NCBI GenBank assembly: GCA_051294905.1
Contig: CM119381.1
Span: 17,484,001-17,548,000 of the forward strand
From: Botryllus schlosseri
Taxonomy: Eukaryota
Reading direction: 5' to 3'
Length of the DNA stretch: 64,000 bases
Positions 42,223 through 56,798 of the stretch are shown one piece after another. The translations under genes were made by a program, and so were the position numbers. How positions within the stretch are numbered: position 1 is the first letter of the stretch; each line of letters starts with the position of its first letter. The notes beneath the pieces were generated by a model that worked only from the letters and a program-made list of their open reading frames with translations, was not told the DNA's origin and did not search any database.

Positions 42223-42374
42223 NNNNNNNNNNNNNNNNNNNNNNNNNNNNNNNNNNNNNNNNNNNNNNNNNNNNNNNNNNNNNNNNNNNNNNNNNNNNNN
42301 NNNNNNNNNNNNNNNNNNNNNNNNNNNNNNNNNNNNNNNNNNNNNNNNNNNNNNNNNNNNNNNNNNNNNNNNNN
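42223..42374. other. Assembly gap (152 N)
   Basis: Run of N in the sequence. Confidence 1.
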
Positions 42375-45781: not shown

Positions 45782-46292
45782 ACTAGACTACTAGGTAATA
45801 AACTAGTAGAACTTTTACCTGTACGTCTGTCTCTTATTTAGATAGCTCAGTGGTCAAAACAATGAAGCTGAGCGCAAAATAGCAGCAGGCGATCGGCGGT
45901 AGTCCTGTCATCGACTGTCGCTTGCGACACGAAACCATCCATCGCGGCATTGGAAGCATACACGACCCAACGACACGGAAAGAAATATGACTGGCGTTAT
46001 CCTTCCTGTGGCCAAATTAATTTTCACAGATCAGTAATCGTGAATTTGAGATACATTGTTTAGCCTATGCGCATCATTATTACAAGAGAAACAGTAATAC
46101 CCAAAATATTATTTGTATATCATCATTTTGATTGATTGATACGCCCAGCCAAAATTGGTGGTCACTGGAGCAGAAAGACAATGAAAACAGCGTGGGTTCT
46201 GTATATTCGTGTATAGTGACTTTTCTTCCAAAATTCGAAAGCTCCTATGAAGCATCTTGCTGTTTGCCGTAGTGAGTGTTAGTTCATTTGCC

Positions 46293-47567
46293 ATGTTTGC
46301 GGTAAAATTTGCTAAATCGATAAAAAACAACCCAAAAAAATCAGTTGTTGTAGCTGGAGCGCTAGCATGGGCTGCTTCGTACGCAAGAGATAAATATGTT
46401 GCGTTTCTGACGGTTCGAGGTGAATGTCAATCAGCGGTGTTATTGGGACGACAGCCGCTAAACCAATTCCAGAACCCGACCCGCGTGTCCGTTTTCATAA
46501 ACCCGGCAGCAAATAACGGAAAATCCGTGAAATTATACGAGAAATATGCCGAGCCGATCTTGCATTTGGCTGGATTCAAAGTTCAATTGGTGAAGTTGCA
46601 GTATGAAGGGGAAGCTAAACAGTTGATGTCAGTTGTGGACGAAACGGATATTATCGTTTCTGCAGGAGGGGATGGCACCCTGACCGAAATTGTGACAGGT
46701 TTACTCCGCAGACCAGATGACGAATGGAAAAAAATTCCAATTGCAATTTTACCTTTGGGAAAGTCAAACACATTATGTAAACGCTTATTGCCGGATGCCG
46801 ACCATGAAAAACACCCTCACCTTATCAGTTCGGCTGCAACTGCGATCACCAAACAAGCATGCACTCCAGTTGATGTGATGCAAATTGAGGGGTCGGAAGG
46901 CAAAACAGTTTATGCCGTGAATAGAATTTCTTGGGGAAATTACTGTGACGTCGAAGAGAGATCACGTAAAATGTGGTATCTTGGTTATCTAAAACCGTAT
47001 GCCGCATATTTCTTGTACTACCTCAGAGGGCGCTTGGATCCACAAACTTTCAAAGTTGCTTTTACAGATCCCTGTGAAGCTCCTGGTTTAGTGGAAAATG
47101 CTGACTATCCCACACAGCAGCAGCAAATATCAAGCTCGTCTGTTCTGTCAAGAATTTTCACAAGACTTTGGCCGTGGCAGTCATCGTCTGCCGATGCCCA
47201 AGATGAATTTCCAGAGCCACAAGAAGAATGCTCAAATTACGCCTGGCACGGCCATGAATCGTCGAGCGTTGAATTCACAGCAGAGGCAAACACCCATCTG
47301 ACGGCAGGCAATCGTGATCTGGCCTCCATAAAAGTGTTCGTTAATAGCGACACGGCATCGATAAATGACTTCTTAAGCCAAAAGGATCATGATTTTTCAA
47401 AGGTGCAAGAAACCTTTGATGCAGGCTCGTTCCAAGTGTCATCCGATGAAAGTGCTTCTGAAAACCGATATATTTCTATTGATAATGATAGGTACGAAGC
47501 AATGGATTTAACAGTGAAACTGTTGCCAAACTGCATAAAAATGATCCACTCTCCATCTGCTGTATAG
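46293..47567 (+). CDS. AGK: Acylglycerol kinase, mitochondrial (DAGK-family lipid kinase), single coding exon, 424 aa
   Basis: N-terminal MFAVKFAKSIKNNPKKSVVVAGALAW like vertebrate AGK; VFINPAA, PILHLAG, YEGEAKQL, SAGGDGTLTEIVTGLLRR catalytic motif, KMWYLGYLK, and C-terminal ISIDNDRYEAMDLTVKLLP all align by eye to AGK. First ATG is 46293; the ORF-track start at 46257 is a TTG. Confidence 0.97.
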   Translation: MFAVKFAKSIKNNPKKSVVVAGALAWAASYARDKYVAFLTVRGECQSAVLLGRQPLNQFQNPTRVSVFINPAANNGKSVKLYEKYAEPILHLAGFKVQLVKLQYEGEAKQLMSVVDETDIIVSAGGDGTLTEIVTGLLRRPDDEWKKIPIAILPLGKSNTLCKRLLPDADHEKHPHLISSAATAITKQACTPVDVMQIEGSEGKTVYAVNRISWGNYCDVEERSRKMWYLGYLKPYAAYFLYYLRGRLDPQTFKVAFTDPCEAPGLVENADYPTQQQQISSSSVLSRIFTRLWPWQSSSADAQDEFPEPQEECSNYAWHGHESSSVEFTAEANTHLTAGNRDLASIKVFVNSDTASINDFLSQKDHDFSKVQETFDAGSFQVSSDESASENRYISIDNDRYEAMDLTVKLLPNCIKMIHSPSAV

Positions 47568-47650
47568 GCTAACTATCTTGTGATGTTTTATTATTGATAT
47601 TACTGGTATATGATAACATTATACTACAATTATGTTCAGTGTCGCATCAT

Positions 47651-47662
47651 ATTATGTTTCAG
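47651..47662 (+). promoter_or_regulatory. Splice acceptor 30 nt upstream of the NAT10 ATG (trans- or cis-splice)
   Basis: ATTATGTTTCAG| resembles NAT10 acceptors such as TAATGTTTTCACAG and TATTTTTCAG; a second TGTTCAG ends at 47639. Confidence 0.5.
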
Positions 47663-47692
47663 AATTTTCTGTAATTACCAAATAGTATCAGT

Positions 47693-50600
47693 ATGGTTCG
47701 GAAAAAGGTTGATAATCGCATAAGAGTCCTCACCGAAAATGGCGTGGCGTTGAATCAAAGGACTATGTTCGTAATTGTTGGGGATCGGGGAAAAGATCAA
47801 GTCGTCATCCTACATCACATGCTATCGAAAGCTGCTGTGAAAGCAAGACCCTCAGTTCTTTGGTGTTACAAGAAAGAATTGGGTTTCAGCACGTATGATC
47901 ATTATTTATTGTCATAAATTTTAATATCCTTGGCAAATAATTACAGTAGAGACTTTGTATTATTGATATGATTTACTCGCTATTAATATGCTTACACAAT
48001 GACTAGACTTTTCGTAGCTGAAATTCTATAATATTTTTACATCATTGATATTTGTTGTATTATAGAGACTCTTGGAGGTACAGAACTCAAGTATAAACCC
48101 AGACTGGAATCGGTGGTTGTTTTCGTCAATAAGTTGCGCGTGACAGAAGGGTTTCTTCCGTAGAATAATTGAAGAATTAAATGAAAAGTTGCGCGTGACG
48201 TTTGCCACCAATTCCACTCTGGATATAAACTGAATAATATATTCATATTGAAATATAGCCTACCTGGATATTTTCGGCTGATACTCGTCAGGGGTAATCG
48301 TCACTCCTCTACTAGTTCACTACTATAGTTGCTGACGATTAGTCCTGACGAGTGTCAGCCGAAAATATTCGGGTGTCCGTTGATATACATCAGTGATACT
48401 ACTAAAATGTCACTTACGAAAAGTCGAGTTCGGTCAATTATTATTCATGATCATTAAGTGATCATAACATCATAAAATATTTCTCTAATAACAGAGTAGT
48501 TCTGTCGAATTAATTGAATTGTCATATTGTAAGATTGTAAGGGGATCAAGTCTGCACTACTTAAATGAGTTGGTCAGTTTACTTGCCAGACTGCTGTGTA
48601 TATTGCACTTGAATGTAGTACCAAACAATAATCCAACATTTAGAAATCGTAAGAAAAGAATGAAGCATCTTCAGAAAAGAATCTCGAAAGGCACTCTGGA
48701 TGTGAATGAAGACGATCCTTTCGAATTGTTTGTTGCCGCAACCAACGTCCGGTATTGCTATTACAATGAGACGCACAAGATTTTAGGAAGCACATATGGA
48801 ATGTGCGTCCTTCAGGTAATGTGATTTTAATGCTACTATCATACACGCTTAAAACTTGATACTCATGTGTCATGTAAACTTGAATTCCATGTCTGGATAT
48901 TGAATAAATTCCCTCTCTCCAGGTTTGTTTTTTGTTAGATGTGAGCCTATTAAAATTCAGACTATGCCCGATCGACTATTACACCTAAGGGTAGCAATTG
49001 TGATTATTGTGATGCAAACGCGAGGTTGAATAAGCATATTATTTGTTGCACCATGGAAAGTTGATGGACGGGTTCATCTAGTGATAATTCTACATTTTCC
49101 AGGATTTCGAGGCACTCACGCCAAATCTTCTGGCTCGGACCATCGAGACAGTCGAAGGCGGCGGAATCATTTGTATCCTGTTAAGAACTATGAAGTCATT
49201 GAAACAGCTCTATACGATGACAATGGTATTGTGCCAGCCGTTATGAACTATGATTAGTTGGGTATTAATTTTGATTGGCATTTAGGACGTTCACTCACGA
49301 TTCCGTACCGAGTCGCATCAGGATGTGGTCGGACGCTTCAATGAAAGGTACGAATCATTTCACACGACACGAAGTTTGATGCTGCAGATTGACATGAGCC
49401 CAAATCTAGTGGCAATTTTGTATCTTTGATTAGTTGGTGGTTATTCGGTGCGATTTCACTCCCAAGTATATATACCACCCATTGTAACTTAACTTACTAC
49501 TTTCAAAATTTAATGTTGCCACAACCAACCATATTTGCTGTGTTAATATTCCGGTTGTGTCCTATTTGTTAGATTATGATTGTTGTCCATCAATTTCAAG
49601 TTTCATATCAAATCAGATAATGTTTTCACAGATTTCTACTATCGCTGTCGTCGTGCAAGCATTCGTTGGTGATCGACGACCAACTCAACATCTTACCGGT
49701 ATCTTCACACGCGCTTAACATCACTGCCATACCTCCAAAGCCGGCGGAAGAATCAATGCTACCCAAAGAAAGAGAGCTGGCCGATTTGAAAGAAAGTTTA
49801 CAAGTAACGTTTGCCTTGCACGGTTGCCGCCGAGCGTTTTTCACATTGAGATTTCCCAGGACACTCAACCGATCGGGTCAATCGTGAACTGTTGTAAGAC
49901 GATGGATCAAGGTAAAGCGTTGCTGAAGTTTATCGACGCGATTTCCGAAAAGACGCTACGCGCCACTGTCGTGATGACGGCAGGTATGCAAAGAGATTAA
50001 AGCCACGGTCGCGACTTTACTTTCAAAGCGACTTATTTTCTGCTTTCCAGCCAGAGGAAGAGGCAAGTCTGCAACACTAGGTCTGGCGCTGGCCGCCGCG
50101 GTCGCGTTCGGTTATTCTAACATATTTGTGACGTCGCCAAGTCCCGAGAATCTCAAGACCCTCTTCGATTTTGTATTCAAAGGCTTCGATGCTTTGGAGT
50201 ATCAGGTACCTGACCTTGCTGTTGCAAACTGGGATATTTATATCATGTCTCACGCCCGCTGCTTTCGTGTAGGAGCATATCGACTACGAGTTGGTTCAAT
50301 CCACCAACCCAGCCCTCAACAAAGCGATCGTCAGAGTCAATATATTTCATGAACATCGGCAAACCATTCAGGTACTTACTTGTTGGCCAACTTGATTTCG
50401 TGAATGCTGTGCTTCTCCATTTGACTTCACTTGACTAATTCACTCGTACCTTTGCAGTATGTGCATCCCACCGACTCAGCTATGTTAGCGCAAGCAGAGC
50501 TGTTGGCTATTGACGAAGCAGCAGCTATACCATTGCCACTTGTCCAAAAGCTCATGGGCCCGTATCTGGTATTTATGTCTTCCACCATTAACGGGTATGT

Positions 50601-53600
50601 TGAAATATTGGTTAGGGGGCTCTAGCCTTGTTGAATCTGATTGTTGTTAAAGTTACGAAGGAACCGGTCGATCGCTTTCGCTCAAACTGGTACAGCAATT
50701 GCGGCAACAGAGTGCGACCAACTGGGCTGACTCAAAATCGGTGAGACACTTGCAGTATTTACTTTTCGGTGACATTCATTGTCCTTACTTGAATTTAAGA
50801 AAAAGTAGTATTCTACAATGTCATTTATCGTTACTTGAATTAATAATTATGCAATAGTTGTTGTTGATGTCACGCTAGTAGACATAACCCATCTAGAGCA
50901 TCAGCATCAACAATAGATCGCCATTGACTCCATGATCACCCCTGGCGGAGATTTTCTGTGATATATGTCGCCATTTAGAGCGGCGCTTGATATTTTGTCA
51001 TGGCCGCGTGTGTTTCAGACAAAGTCCCCTCTCGGACGGTCGTTGTACGAGCTTACGTTGGAAGAATCGATCCGATACGCTCCAAACGATCCCGTGGAGA
51101 ACTGGCTCAACGATTTGCTGTGCCTGAATTGTACGTCGTCGTCGCCTCTCGGGCTCATTGGGGCCGGATGCCCTGTCCCTGATGCGTGTGAACTATATCC
51201 TTTGCTTAGACGTTTTGTGCTCATAATATGACGTGTTCCACGGTGGTATTACGGAAGCTAGTCGACAGAAGCGGTGTCGACCGCGGGGTGGCGGACTGCG
51301 AGTTTTTCAACTACGCTGTGATGCAGCGATGCAGGGGCTCGGCATTCAAAGTCTACTTCCCTAGGGTCACCATAGTTTGAATTCCAAAAAAGAGGACACT
51401 TTTTACAAGGTATTAAAGCTTTGGTAGTGGTCAAGGGTAAAATTTTTGCGGATAATATTATTGGGTTGACTGAAAGAAAGTAATTCTTCCAACTCGACTC
51501 TCGTAAGACCGACTCCCACGTGAATTCGCCTTTTTTGTCAACCATGCCGGCAACCAATCTTCCCTCTAATTTGTGACGAGTCTGCTCACACTCACCAACT
51601 CACTGCGCAGACCCTTGGAAAACCGTGCGTAACGACTAAAAAAAAGGTCATCACTTCAGATTTTTCGTGCGCAAGTTAGATTTTCTGTGCGCAGAGACCG
51701 TGAAAGCACTGCGCATTTGCGCACGTGCGTAGCTTAGAGGGAGCATTGCCGGCAACCCTCTCACAATCTAGATATGACGTCATTTATGCCATTTATTAGC
51801 CGTCCCTGTACAGTCGCCTGGCTATCAAAGCTATAAAGGAGGACAAATTGCCAAAAATGGGGACATTTTCGATTCCTTGGAAGAGCGGGACAAATCATCA
51901 AAAGAGGACATATGCTAACCCTATGTACCTGATGCCAGTTCTGAGACTGCGATTCTCTTCAAAATGCGTCTTAGTAAACCACCTGGGTAGTGCTAGGGAA
52001 AGTTTTAGAACTTGTGATAAGACGTTAAAATTTGGAATAGTTTTCATTGTTCTTCCTCATGATTATCTGTTAGTGTTTATATTCAATCGAAATCAGTATG
52101 TGGCATCTCCTTGACTCCGATCGCACATATTACGTGAATCGCGACACTCTGTTTTGCTACCACAAAGCGTCGGAATCTTTCCTGCAAAAGCTCATGTCTC
52201 TGTATGTCGCCTCGCATTACAAGGTATGCGGTCGTGATTGATTTTCCTCCACCTTTCTGTTTCGTAACCGCCTCGCGTTTAGAATTCTCCGAACGATCTC
52301 CAGATGTTGTCAGATGCTCCAGCTCATCATATATTCTGTTTGCTACCGCCCGTCAAGCCGGATCAAAAGAACATACCGGACGTCTTGTGCGTTTTGCAGG
52401 TAAGATAAATTTATTTGCCCCCCCCCCCACCCACGTGGCCATTTCTGGGAATACGCCTGTTTTTAGGTGTGCTTCGAAGGGGAGATTAGCAAGGAATCGA
52501 TATCCGCAAGTTTGAGGCGAGGCAAGCGTGCCTCTGGCGATCTGATCCCGTGGACGATATCGGAGCAGTATCAGGACCATCAGTTCGGGAATTTGTCGGG
52601 GATTCGAATCGTAAGTGTTTGAAGTAGATTCAGTATGCTTTCAAGTGTGGTCAGGATCGATCATTGGCTAGAATTCTGTGTCAATGTCAGTATCAGCCAC
52701 TTGATGGTCAGTAACGAAGTGCTTCTACTTTTTTGCAGTACTCAATTACGTTTTGCCTACTTGCACTTCGATCTTTCGATTGCTTCCACTTCTACCTGAC
52801 AGTTAGATTTCAGTTTCTTAGGAAAAGCTGGCCTAGAAGACTTACTTTTCTGCTATGAAATCATTACGTCTACTACTTGAGTACCAATGATGACTACATC
52901 GACCACCTCTCTGGTCATCGTTATGCGTTCGACAAGAATATAAAAGATTGTGTAACTTGTAGATGTATCAGCATATTTTGTGAATTTCGAGAAGTAACTT
53001 TCTCATCGTAATGCAGAGACACTCACTCGCCCTATATTTCCGAAATATTCCCTTGTGCCGATTACGATTTCTGATTTAGGTGAGAATCGCCACGCATCCG
53101 AGTTACCAAAGCATGGGGTACGGGGGACAAGCGTTGTCCATGCTGCAAAAGTATTTCGAAGGCAAAATATATGACATATCGGAATGGTCCGGGCCGCGCG
53201 AAAATGAACTCGCCATCAACAGAGTAACGGAAGAGGTACGGGATTTTGCAATCAAATGTCACTCCAAATGTTTTAAGATATTATAATTTGCGCCTCTTTA
53301 CCAGGACGTCGGATTGCTGGATGAGGCAGTCGTGCCTAGGAAGAATCTTCCCCCGTTGTTGTTGAAATTAACCGAAAGGAGACCGGAAAGACTGGACTAC
53401 ATTGGCGTGTCGTTCGGACTGACCGGACCGCTTTTAAGGTGCTCTTGCGTACCCTAATATTAATTAATTAATTAATTAATGACTGAACCGTTGCGCTTGC
53501 CTCAAGGTTTTGGAGCCGGCAGGGGTTTGTGCCGTTGTATTTGAGACAGACCGCTAACGATTTAACGGGAGAGCATTCGTGCATCATGCTGAAAGGCCTC

Positions 53601-56600
53601 TCGCATCAGCAGAAGTCGGATTCGTACGGAACACCGGACCCGAAGTCCGACTGGTTATCGGCGTATTGCAAAGGTACGCGTGCGACGCTGACACACAATT
53701 AGGGTTTTCTCTAGCTTGCTTAATTAATAATTCAATCACATAAAGAGGCGTCGCTTGCTTTTGGTCAGGAACCACTTGAGCTTCCACCGATCGGAAAGGC
53801 CCCAAATTTGGTCGATGACGATTATTTGGACAATACAACCAGTCGCGACCGATTAGCTAGCTAAATTTGTGGAAACAGCCGGTGCTATGAAGTTATGAAT
53901 TATTCCAGATTTTGAACGGAGATTCGTGTCGCTCCTTCCCTATCAGTTTGCGAAGTTCAAGACGTCGGTCGCGCTTCAGATCCTCCACCGGAAAAAGACG
54001 GAATTCAAGAGTCTTGCCGGCGACTCGACGCTTTTAACCAAATCCGAGCTGGACATTCATTTTCTTCCGTACGACTTCAAGCGGCTCGAGATCTACTCGA
54101 AAAACATGGCCGACTACCATCTGATACTGGACCTGCTGCCGTGCGTCGCGAGGCTGTTCTTCCTCCGCAAGATCGACGTGCCGCTGTCGTCGGCGCAAAA
54201 GGTACGGTGTTACCGATGTTGATCAAGCTAATATACGCGACTTATTTGCAGAAGTGGTCGAAATAGTCAGCATTGCCAGTAAGAGTAGAAATAACGCGGC
54301 CAAATTACAAGTAGACAGACTGTTTCAAGGGAGATTAGAAACTGATAGGTTTGAAAAGTACTCGAGTAGTTTTGAAACTTGGACTCAGTCACGGGTTCGC
54401 ATGCTTTAGCATTTGCTCGTAGTTGGCTACATTTGAAATTGCAAGATGCGTCTTCACAGAGGGGGACCAAGCAGTCGGCGTTGCTACTCAAGTAAAAGTA
54501 GAAGCAACGGCGTGACTTTCTGCTTGTTTAAAAGTTGAAGTAGCAATTACCGAAACATAGCAAAACTGCTTTGACTGGAAGTAGAAAATGGAACGTCTGA
54601 AAAGTGTTCAAATAGACACTTTCAGAAATTTTATTCGGTTGATTGTGTGCATCCTTGGGCACTGGGCAGTTACTTGGTGGTGGCTACTTTCGAATTTGCG
54701 AGATGCATCTTTGCGAGTAACGCAAAGTCGGTACTGGCACTACAAATGGGTACGATCTTTGAATTATATTTACCATTACCAGTTACTGTTACACAGGCTA
54801 AATTCGCGACGTTCTTACAACGATTTCACATGATGCAAACTTAACCCAAAACTAATTTATTTATTAAATTTCCAAGTGTTAACAGTAAGTAGTTTTACCA
54901 AAAAGGTTCAAGTGTACAAACATAACCAAGAATGACTAAGCGTTTCGTTACAGACTACGTCTGTAATTGCTATAGTGTGGTTTTGTAAATTCATCGCCAC
55001 TTGAGTATGTAGCGCAAATAGGCAAAACCTAGGTTGCTTGGCGACTTTGTTACCGACCGCCACTGGTTGTTCGCAGGCGATTTTGATGGGGATGGGCCTG
55101 CAGCACAAAAGCGTCGACGCGCTGGCGAAGGAACTCGGCTTGCCGTCGTCTCAAGTAAGCTTTTGTTTTCGCTCCCGGCCGGCGCATGCTGATGTCGTCG
55201 CTATTTGTAGATTCTGGGACTTTTCAACCGTACCGTCAGGAAGCTGACTGGTTTTCTCGACGAGGTCGTCGCAAAAGACGTCGAGATATCTCTGGAGGGC
55301 TTGAAACCGGCGAGCGCCGCGAAAGACGTCGACATGAAGCCCGTCGAGGTGTCTTTGGACGATGAACTGGTGAGATTTGAGGATGGTTGAAATGATTATA
55401 TCGGCTAATTTGTGGAGTCTGCTGCCACGGAGCAGAAGGAGAAGTAACATCGTAGATTGCTACTCTATTTCGAGTAGATATACTACTTTGAGTAAATTAG
55501 AAAATGGATGTCTGTAAAGTAATCTTGCGAGTAGTTTCAAAGGTGGCCATTTTGACAATTCCAGGGTGCGTCTTCACGACTTAACCGAAACGAAAAACTT
55601 CACTACAAATAGGTGCAATTTTCGAAAATGTGTTCATTGTTTTTTACCGCGAGACGGTTGCTATTTTGCCGTTTTGCCCATTCACTTATGGAAGCGATAC
55701 ATATTCCAAAACTACTTCTGCTTTACAAAATCCAAAGTTTAAAAAGGAAGTAGTTTTACCTTGATATGTTGAAGAAGTGGAAGCAGTCTAAAGACGTAAC
55801 CGTTTGAGACGAATGGATATCTGTGAGGGCTTGTTAATGTGGGTAGCAGGATTGCCATACAGAGTTAGTGGTAGGTTTCGTTTATCCGTTGTGACAACTT
55901 GTCATTATAGTGTTAAGCTGTGAATGTGCTAGAATTTCCAGCTGAAATTATTAGGATACTAACATCAGATCCACTATTCTGGTTGCTCTACTAACACACT
56001 GGTAAGAACATCAACGAGATGTAGTCATGTCAGGACAATAAACTCCCAGTACTCATAACAGATTGGTGATGACATGGTACTTGCGTGGACCTCCGTCGAT
56101 AATCGCGTATGCATGTGGTCTTGAAATTGGCGATGTTAAGAGCCGGCCGTGTTCAAGACAATGAATTGTTGAGTTATTGTGTAATCTTAAACCTTTTGAA
56201 AGTCCTTGCTATCCCTGATCATTTTTACGAACCGGAATCCTTGTTGGCGTGCTCAAATGTGCATGACATGTGAGGGATTTCATCTGTCAAATTTTGATTT
56301 CAAATTTAGGACCAAGCTGCCGAGGAAGTGAAGAAGAAGCACACGACTGAAATCAAAGCTGCCTTGGATGGTCTCGACTTGGCACAGTAAGATTTCAATT
56401 TCCAAACATTTTCGCTGAGAAATCATCCTCCAGGACACCACCACAAAGCATATTTGTTTTGCACATACAAACTTTTGAATGTGGAAATGCACTTTCATTA
56501 GTGTTTTCCATTTGATGTGAAAAGACTATTTTTCAGGTATGAGATTCGCGGGTCCAAGGATGATTGGGACAAAGCTTTGTCCAAGGGCAAGAAAGTGAAC

Positions 56601-56798
56601 ATCATCAGCGTCAAAAGGTATACTTATTATCAAGACACTTCTCTTGGAATTCAGAGTGGCAACTTTTTTATTTTGCTTAGCGGGGAGAAAAGAAGCGCCG
56701 ACAACGATGAATCGGTTGTGACGGAAGAAAAGTCGAAAGTTCGAAAAAAGAAGAAATTTGGCGAAAAGTCGAACAAAAAATTCCGCAAACAAAAATAG
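47693..56798 (+). CDS. NAT10: RNA cytidine acetyltransferase NAT10 (Kre33), 23 coding exons, 1042 aa
   Basis: Exons: 47693-47892, 48644-48815, 49103-49225, 49286-49347, 49632-49803, 49860-49983, 50051-50205, 50273-50371, 50458-50594, 50653-50740, 51019-51194, 52127-52223, 52283-52399, 52467-52610, 53080-53235, 53305-53438, 53507-53673, 53909-54201, 55077-55154, 55211-55369, 56310-56386, 56537-56617, 56681-56798 (3129 nt, all phases compatible). Motifs MVRKKVDNRIR, TAARGRGKS (Walker A), IDEAAAIP, RIATHPSYQSMGYG (GNAT acetyl-CoA site) and a Lys-rich C-terminus. 21 introns are GT-AG and one is AT-AC. Confidence 0.97.
48060..48375. repeat. Interspersed repeat in NAT10 intron 1 ending in a ~43-bp-arm inverted repeat (48261-48303 / 48332-48375)
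   Basis: Arms GGATATTTTCGGCTGATACTCGTCAGGGGTAATCGTCA and TGACGATTAGTCCTGACGAGTGTCAGCCGAAAATATTC. It shares CTTGGAGGTACAGAACT, TATATTCATATTGAAAT and the arm sequence with 60520-60640. Confidence 0.8.
51362..51923. mobile_element. Decayed hAT (Blackjack-like) MITE inside the U12 intron
   Basis: Ends TAGGGTCACCATA / TATGCTAACCCTA with subterminal GAGGACA and GGGACA repeats; no TSD recognisable. Confidence 0.6.
51555..51748. mobile_element. Small hAT MITE nested in the above, 194 bp
   Basis: TIRs CAATCTTCCCTCTAA / TTAGAGGGAGCATTG; perfect 8-bp TSD CCGGCAAC (51547-51554, 51749-51756). Confidence 0.87.
52698..52913 (-). mobile_element. Short (~215 bp) decayed derivative of the CAGAGGTGG hAT family in NAT10 intron 14
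   Basis: TGGTCAGTAACGAAGTGCTTCTAC at left and GACCACCTCT at right; similar to 57280-57491. Confidence 0.6.
53461..53480. repeat. (TAAT)5 microsatellite in 68-nt NAT10 intron 16
   Basis: taattaattaattaattaat. Confidence 0.9.
54249..55065 (+). mobile_element. Decayed ~817 bp member of the CAGAGGTGG hAT family filling NAT10 intron 18
   Basis: Left CAGAAGTGGTCGAAATAGTCAG and right ACTTTGTTACCGACCGCCACTG are degenerate family termini; flanks CTTATTTG / GTTGTTCG (5/8, possible decayed TSD); GTAGCGCAAATAGGCAAAACCTA shared with 13400-13579. Confidence 0.65.

What the first reader, a model, noticed from the sequence alone, without database searches (positions are those of the whole stretch)
51195..52126. 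AT-AC minor-spliceosome intron in the middle of NAT10
Seen: ATATCCTTT donor, TCCTTGAC branch box 12 nt from a terminal AC, and exact restoration of ACELYYVNRD; no GT-AG solution keeps this sequence. Known: these are the U11/U12 consensus signals, AT-AC introns are rare, and several lineages have reduced or lost the minor spliceosome. Inference: this organism keeps a working minor spliceosome. Retention reads ELYPLLRRFVLII* and truncates NAT10 before the GNAT domain, so ac4C-writer levels could depend on U12 splicing. GT-AG-only gene predictors will mis-model this exon pair.
Basis: partly seen in the sequence, partly recalled or inferred. Interest (0 to 1): 0.7.

Follow-up and report, generated by a model that had tools for sequence, protein, structure and literature searches.

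The report
Conserved U12 AT-AC intron in NAT10
The NAT10 gene in this window has a real "minor spliceosome" intron with AT-AC ends, but it is the same intron already catalogued in human and mouse NAT10 and present in many other animals, so it is a correct, ordinary observation.

Summary
Observation confirmed. Window 51195-52126 (932 nt) starts ATATCCTTT and has TCCTTGAC with its branch A 12 nt from the terminal AC. Joining 51194 to 52127 restores ...PDACELYYVNRD.

A 1263-nt intron-less transcript contig from public run X1 uses exactly this AT..AC joint. Its other 12 intron joints are GT..AG.

The genome carries single full-length U11, U12, U4atac and U6atac genes, all above Rfam cut-offs. They have intact recognition boxes and a shared upstream CACC(G/A)(T/G)AAA promoter-like box. 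A PDCD7 (U11/U12-59K) gene is also present. The minor spliceosome is therefore there.

It is not new. NAT10 is a listed minor-intron gene in human and mouse (MIDB), with donors ACT|GTATCC and GCT|GTATCC that fit the same Leu codon and phase. Seven other eukaryotic contigs have an intron at the identical codon position: three AT-AC U12, three GT-type U12, one short U2-type. In addition, 42 of 150 related protein fragments read "LYP" there, which is the read-through signature of an [A/G]TATCC donor.

So this is an ancient, conserved U12 intron, here in the AT-AC subtype and enlarged by a high-copy MITE. The idea that NAT10 dosage is regulated through it is generic and untested. The scan noted other U12 introns elsewhere in this genome.

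The parts
47694..56795 (+). NAT10 (RNA cytidine acetyltransferase) gene. The start ATG is at 47694. The 3' end is approximate and was not mapped in detail.
   Evidence: Exon translations match human NAT10 in the PDB. Pfam GNAT_acetyltr_2 and tRNA_bind_2 match. Exon-like ORFs are listed. It is the only GNAT_acetyltr_2 locus in the genome.
51019..51194 (+). Upstream exon (176 nt). It ends with GAA CT, that is Glu plus the first two bases of Leu (human E506/L507).
   Evidence: Contig joints are. The acceptor was corrected.
51195..52126 (+). U12-type AT-AC intron, 932 nt, phase 2.
   Evidence: Sequence. The joint 51194->52127 'AT..AC' is in the X1 contig, record 2.
51195..51203 (+). 5' splice site ATATCCTTT (U11/U6atac recognition).
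   Evidence: Predicted duplexes with this genome's own U11 5' end and U6atac AAGGAGAG box are.
52108..52115 (+). Branch-point box TCCTTGAC. The branch A is at 52114, 12 nt from the intron end.
   Evidence: The predicted duplex with U12 GUAAGGA is -10.1 kcal/mol with one unpaired base.
52125..52126 (+). 3' terminal AC.
52127..52221 (+). Downstream exon (95 nt), A + YYVNRDTLFCYHKASESFLQKLMSLYVASHY.
   Evidence: (human residues 508-538) and the joints.
51555..51748 (.). MITE-like insertion of about 195 bp inside the intron, with 15-nt terminal inverted repeats. It is a passenger, not part of the splicing signals.
   Evidence: Inverted repeat. There were 2104 first-look candidates, and all 40 scored matches (one is this copy itself) are 90-100% identical. 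Read depth is very high on both strands.

Best explanation
Window 51195-52126 is a functional U12-dependent (minor-spliceosome) intron of the AT-AC subtype in the single-copy NAT10 gene. It splits the codon that corresponds to human Leu507, one short exon before the acetyltransferase (GNAT) domain.

Inferred mechanism, from established knowledge of U12 splicing:
- The U11/U12 di-snRNP binds the ATATCCTTT donor and the TCCTTGAC branch box together.
- U6atac then replaces U11 at the donor.
- The branch A at 52114 attacks, and the exons are joined at 51194|52127.

The intron is orthologous to the known NAT10 minor intron of human and mouse, which is of the GT-AG subtype. It is also orthologous to introns at the same codon in many other eukaryotes. 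It is therefore an ancient retained minor intron, not a lineage novelty. Its length here owes at least about 195 nt to a MITE insertion. A close relative has a 113-nt version.
For: Shown:
- Consensus donor, branch box at the right distance, AT-AC ends and exact frame restoration.
- A 1263-nt intron-less contig of run X1 with the AT..AC joint, next to 12 GT..AG joints.
- Only one NAT10 locus in the genome, so the contig is not a processed copy from this assembly.
- U12 at 101.9 bits, U11 at 96, U6atac at 75.7 and U4atac at 61.2, all full length and over Rfam gathering scores.
- Intact GUAAGGA (U12), AAAAGGG (U11) and AAGGAGAG (U6atac) boxes.
- A shared CACC(G/A)(T/G)AAA box 56-66 nt upstream of all four genes.
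- A PDCD7/59K gene.
- MIDB lists NAT10/Nat10 as a minor-intron gene, with 5'ss ACT|GTATCCTCC in human and GCT|GTATCCTCC in mouse (PMC6717393 supplements).
- Same-position introns elsewhere: L007, L008 and L009 are AT-AC with TCCTTGAC, TCCTTAAC or CCCTTGAC boxes. L010, L011 and L012 have GTATCC donors, and L012 ends in AG after TTCTTAAC.
- 42 of 150 hit fragments read L-Y-P after the exon.
Against: - Only one run supports the junction. It is stored as contigs, and its RNA label is a guess.
- Three raw-read RNA runs had under 1.5x depth on NAT10 exons and showed no read across this joint.
- Dependence on the minor spliceosome is inferred from sequence signals, not tested.
- Identity of position with the human intron rests on the three exon letters printed in MIDB and on protein alignment, not on a direct genomic alignment.
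Confidence: 0.93

Rival explanations
1. It is an AT-AC intron removed by the major (U2-type) spliceosome, a rare known class.
For: An earlier scan note reports a U2-type AT-AC intron elsewhere in this genome (s1-262580). I did not check it.
Against: U2-type AT-AC introns lack the ATATCCTT donor and the TCCTTRAC box. Here both are perfect or near-perfect, the branch box sits 12 nt from the 3' end, and no polypyrimidine tract precedes the AC. Orthologues alternate between AT-AC and GT-AG while keeping TATCC and the box, which is the hallmark of U12 introns.
Confidence: 0.02
2. The main transcript uses a different (GT-AG) pair, and the AT-AC joint is a minor or artefactual isoform.
For: Twelve in-frame, stop-free GT..AG pairings exist mechanically. 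Raw-read runs were too thin to count junctions.
Against: None of the twelve restores the conserved ACELYYVNRD. The only transcript contig across the site uses AT..AC at a depth equal to its neighbouring joints (39.6). Three other species restore the same peptide through AT-AC.
Confidence: 0.02
3. The intron is a regulated ('detained') switch: NAT10 and ac4C output is tuned by how efficiently the minor spliceosome removes it. Retention would give a truncated or NMD-targeted product.
For: Retention gives a stop after 12 codons, before the GNAT domain. MIDB file 7 lists retention values of about 0.08-0.10 for the mouse Nat10 minor intron in its table of retained minor introns.
Against: No evidence of retention here. 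X1 depth in the unique intron bin 51301-51477 is 0.9, against 16-40 on the flanking exons, although contig depth is a poor measure. The argument applies equally to every minor-intron gene.
Confidence: 0.15

Closest known systems
Human and mouse NAT10 minor intron (MIDB; Olthof et al. 2019, PMC6717393)
   Same: Same gene. The donor core is TATCC and the branch box is TTCTTAAC-like. The exon letters before the donor (GA[A/G] CT) fit the same Glu-Leu codons and phase 2.
   Different: The mammalian intron is the GT-AG subtype (GTATCCTCC) and measures 593 nt in human and 534 nt in mouse. Here it is AT-AC with a perfect ATATCCTTT, measures 932 nt and carries a MITE.
Orthologous NAT10 introns in unnamed eukaryotic contigs L007, L008 and L009 (AT-AC) and L010, L011 and L012 (GT-type)
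   Same: Identical codon position and phase, U12 donor and branch box, and the same restored peptide LYYVNRD.
   Different: Lengths are 113-955 nt. The subtype varies. L013, a Tara Oceans scaffold, has a 52-nt U2-type GTATGT..CAG intron at the same position, so the type has switched in some lineage.
Minor spliceosome of ascidian tunicates (Didemnum vexillum ncRNA survey, PMC5006418; pan-eukaryotic survey, bioRxiv 10.1101/2022.09.24.509304)
   Same: The genome carries one copy each of U11, U12, U4atac and U6atac, close to what was reported for D. vexillum (two U11 copies and one each of the other three).
   Different: That this genome is a sea squirt comes only from earlier scan notes. I did not verify it.

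Membership tests
U12-type (minor-spliceosome) intron, AT-AC subtype | 5' splice site /[A/G]TATCCTT directly at the exon boundary | tested here: met
   ATATCCTTT at 51195-51203.
U12-type (minor-spliceosome) intron, AT-AC subtype | Branch-point box TCCTTRAY about 10-15 nt upstream of the 3' splice site, with no strong polypyrimidine tract | tested here: met
   TCCTTGAC at 52108-52115, with the branch A 12 nt from the end. The spacer TCCGATCGC is not a pyrimidine run.
U12-type (minor-spliceosome) intron, AT-AC subtype | Terminal dinucleotides AT and AC, removed at exactly these boundaries in RNA | tested here: met
   The joint 51194->52127, ends AT..AC, is in a 1263-nt intron-less contig of run X1. 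This is one run, and raw-read runs were too thin.
U12-type (minor-spliceosome) intron, AT-AC subtype | Cognate machinery present: U11, U12, U4atac and U6atac snRNAs and specific proteins | tested here: met
   All four snRNAs are over Rfam cut-offs and full length. Pfam PDCD7 matches at 58.5 bits.
U12-type (minor-spliceosome) intron, AT-AC subtype | Splicing depends on the minor, not the major, spliceosome | not testable with these tools
   This needs a U12 or U6atac knock-down, or an in vitro assay.
Orthologue of the catalogued NAT10 minor intron | Same codon and phase as in other species | tested here: met
   Six contigs have U12 donors and one has a U2-type donor, all after the second base of the same Leu codon. 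For human and mouse this is inferred from the MIDB donor strings ACT| and GCT| and from protein numbering, not from a genomic alignment.
NAT10/Kre33 RNA cytidine acetyltransferase | Helicase, GNAT_acetyltr_2 and tRNA_bind_2 domain order, and close similarity to human NAT10 | tested here: met
   Flanking exons hit human NAT10 (7mq8_NJ) at 1e-15 and 2e-13. PF13718 and PF13725 match downstream exons. PF05127 is recorded for homologous upstream fragments.

The most novel reading that the evidence does not exclude
The AT-AC NAT10 intron acts as a dosage valve. In a lineage said to have shed many minor introns, this one may be kept because slow U12 splicing, possibly altered by the MITE inside it, sets the level of the only ac4C writer. 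It would link ribosome and tRNA acetylation to minor-spliceosome activity.
Probability: 0.1. Interest if true: 0.4.

Novelty: already known. Interest (0 to 1): 0.12.

Why it matters
The main value is for annotation. Gene predictors limited to GT-AG will break NAT10 at this exon pair. Many database 'proteins' are in fact ORF calls that run from this exon into the intron and read 'LYP...'.

It also adds one data point on which ancestral minor introns survive, and on AT-AC versus GT-AG subtype switching at one orthologous site. It does not open a new question. The presence of the minor spliceosome and the status of NAT10 as a minor-intron gene are both published.

Tried and rejected
- Raw RNA-seq runs X16, X18 and X20 gave under 1.5x depth on NAT10 exons. 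They could not confirm or deny the joint and gave no usable retention estimate.
- An odd joint 50723->51018, 'GG..CA' with 22 extra letters, looked like a micro-exon. It is an alignment artefact of a 6-nt in-frame indel between the assembly and the X1 individual. The real intron is 50741-51018, GT-AG.
- A second ATATCCTT at 47924 lies inside the ordinary GT-AG first intron of NAT10 and is not used.
- Rfam found nothing in the window or inside the intron, so there is no intronic snoRNA.
- L005, a weak U4atac hit, is the major U4 gene.
- Full-text searches for NAT10 with 'minor intron' or 'U12-type' gave only incidental reviews. The information was in MIDB supplements.
It gave one chance-level hit with a mismatch, which is uninformative.
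- Two look-ups meant to show U2-converted introns returned no DNA.

Full report
**Observation.** The sequence is as described.
- The stretch 51195-52126 (932 nt) begins ATATCCTTT.
- TCCTTGAC lies at 52108-52115. Its branch adenosine (52114) is 12 nt from the last base, and the stretch ends in AC.
- Joining 51194 to 52127 gives ...GCPVPDACE-L-YYVNRDTLFCYHK. The Leu codon is split after its second base (phase 2).
- An ATAT repeat on both sides makes the cut formally ambiguous by 4 nt. Only the leftmost cut gives AT-AC with a consensus donor.
- Reading into the intron gives ELYPLLRRFVLII followed by a stop.
- I enumerated GT..AG pairs around the site. Twelve are in frame and stop-free, but none restores the conserved ACELYYVNRD.
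- The donor 8-mer alone is not rare in the window (3 seen, 3.5 expected).
- The significance lies in the combination. The donor sits exactly at an exon end. The only + strand branch box within 20 kb sits at the right distance from an AC that restores the frame.

**The gene.** The flanking exons match human NAT10 in the PDB.
- The upstream exon matches residues 457-506 (E=1e-15). The downstream exon matches residues 508-538 (E=2e-13). The intron therefore splits the equivalent of Leu507.
- Pfam GNAT_acetyltr_2 matches start at window 52280, and all matches in the 495.5-Mb genome lie in this one locus. NAT10 is single copy, and the intron lies one 95-nt exon before the acetyltransferase domain.
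- tRNA_bind_2 follows further downstream.

**Transcript evidence.** I laid four runs on 49000-54300.
- Run X1 is kept as contigs, and its RNA label is a guess.
- X1 holds a 1263-nt contig (depth 39.6) from which introns are removed.
- The intron joints listed for X1 include 51194->52127, 'skips 932, AT..AC'. Twelve other X1 intron joints are GT..AG.
- One X1 joint, 50723->51018, carried 22 extra letters. It is explained by a 6-nt in-frame indel between individuals. The true intron there is 50741-51018, GT-AG.
- Because the genome has a single, intron-bearing NAT10 locus, the intron-less contig must come from spliced RNA.
- The three raw-read RNA runs had under 1.5x depth on NAT10 exons and are uninformative. 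This is the main weakness: one run supports the junction.

**Machinery.** Infernal searches of the whole assembly found one full-length copy of each minor snRNA above the Rfam gathering score (re-scored).
- U12 scored 101.9 bits, U11 96.0, U6atac 75.7 and U4atac 61.2.
- A second weak U4atac hit is the major U4.
- The functional boxes are intact: U12 GAGUAAGGAAAAU, the U11 5' end CAAAAGGGCUU, and U6atac AAAAGGAGAG.
- The predicted duplex of the branch box with U12 is -10.1 kcal/mol with one unpaired base.
- All four genes share a CACC(G/A)(T/G)AAA box 56-66 nt upstream, which looks like a proximal sequence element. U6atac also has a TATA-like run.
- A PDCD7 (U11/U12-59K) gene is present.

**Is it conserved?** Yes.
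- The MIDB supplements (Olthof et al. 2019, PMC6717393) list NAT10 and Nat10 as minor-intron genes in both human and mouse.
- The human intron is chr11:34131532-34132124 (593 nt). Its donor is ACT|GTATCCTCC and its branch region is GGTTTCTTAACT. The mouse donor is GCT|GTATCCTCC.
- The exon letters GA(A/G)-CT fit Glu-Leu in phase 2, as here. This is an inference from three letters plus protein numbering, not a genomic alignment.
- I searched the 1.84-billion protein representatives with the upstream exon. By a rough pattern match, 42 of the 150 best hits continue '...C[E/D] L-Y-P'. Many of the hits are short ORF calls.
- That is what CT|[A/G]TATCC gives when it is read through.
- I fetched DNA for six of these and read the sites.
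  - L007 (88% identical exon) has CT|ATATCCTTTT ... CCCTTGAC ... AC, 113 nt.
  - L008 has CT|ATATCCTTTT ... TTCCTTAAC ... AC, 360 nt.
  - L009 has TT|ATATCCTTTC ... TTCCTTGAC ... AC, 281 nt.
  - L010 has TT|GTATCCTTTG.
  - L011 has CT|GTATCCGCTG.
  - L012 has TT|GTATCCTTTC ... TTTTCTTAAC ... AG, 955 nt.
- All six sit after the second base of the same Leu codon. Where the acceptor was on the contig (L007, L008, L009 and L012), splicing restores LYYVNRD.
- A Tara Oceans scaffold (L013) has a 52-nt GTATGT...CAG intron at the same position, which is a U2-type version.
- The position is therefore ancient, both U12 subtypes occur, and the type has switched somewhere. All of this is known behaviour of minor introns.

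**Context.**
- Earlier notes of this scan call the genome a sea squirt and list further U12 introns in it (SRSF10, BRCC36, hnRNP L, a HECT gene). I did not verify the taxon.
- If the label is right, the literature already reports minor snRNAs in ascidians and their loss in Oikopleura (PMC5006418).
- NAT10 would then be one of the retained ones.

**Intron content.**
- The intron holds a 195-bp MITE (51555-51748) with 15-nt terminal inverted repeats.
- There were 2104 first-look candidates, and all 40 scored matches (one is this copy itself) are 90-100% identical.
- This explains the very high read depth on both strands there, and part of the size difference from the 113-nt relative.
- Rfam finds no RNA gene in the intron.

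**Regulatory idea.**
- Retention would truncate NAT10 or expose it to NMD. This is true of most minor-intron genes.
- I saw no sign of retention. X1 depth is 0.9 in the unique intron bin, against 16-40 on the flanking exons, but contig depth is a poor measure.
- I rate a specific regulatory role at 10-15%.

**Verdict.** This is a real, correctly read U12-type AT-AC intron that uses a present minor spliceosome. It is orthologous to a catalogued minor intron and therefore already known. Its practical value is for gene models.

Noticed in passing
window 46251-47564 (+), and the gap 47565-47693: A single-exon 438-aa ORF carries DAGK_cat and AGK_C domains (acylglycerol kinase). It ends about 125 nt before the NAT10 start codon on the same strand. 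A TTTCAG acceptor-like site lies at 47657-47662.
   Followed up: partly
window 51555-51748: A MITE of about 195 bp with 15-nt terminal inverted repeats. It has 2104 first-look candidates in the genome at 90-95% identity. Reads cover it on both strands in all four runs.
   Followed up: partly
window 52540-52893: A second high-depth repeat (X1 depth 1,500-2,500) lies inside the 469-nt GT-AG intron 52611-53079. I did not characterise it.
   Followed up: no
window 50724-50740: A 6-nt in-frame indel, plus 3-4% substitutions, separates the assembly from the X1 transcript contig. It falls in the poorly conserved linker of NAT10 (TNWADSKS against TNSGAADSKS). This points to high polymorphism or a different population.
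   Followed up: yes
L001, L002, L003, L004 (56-66 nt upstream of each snRNA start): All four minor snRNA genes share a CACC(G/A)(T/G)AAA box, a candidate proximal sequence element. U6atac also has TATATATAG nearer the start. U6atac lacks the 17-nt internal hairpin of the Rfam consensus.
   Followed up: partly
L013:1586-1637 (Tara Oceans scaffold): A 52-nt U2-type intron (GTATGT..CAG) sits at exactly the NAT10 codon position that holds a U12 intron elsewhere. It is an example of a type switch at an orthologous site.
   Followed up: partly
protein hits P0001-P0150: The protein collection holds dozens of 'proteins' that are ORF calls running from this NAT10 exon into the minor intron. They are recognisable by the L-Y-P continuation. 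This gives a cheap way to survey U12 donors without genome annotation.
   Followed up: partly
window 42223-42374: A run of 152 N (gap or masked).
   Followed up: no
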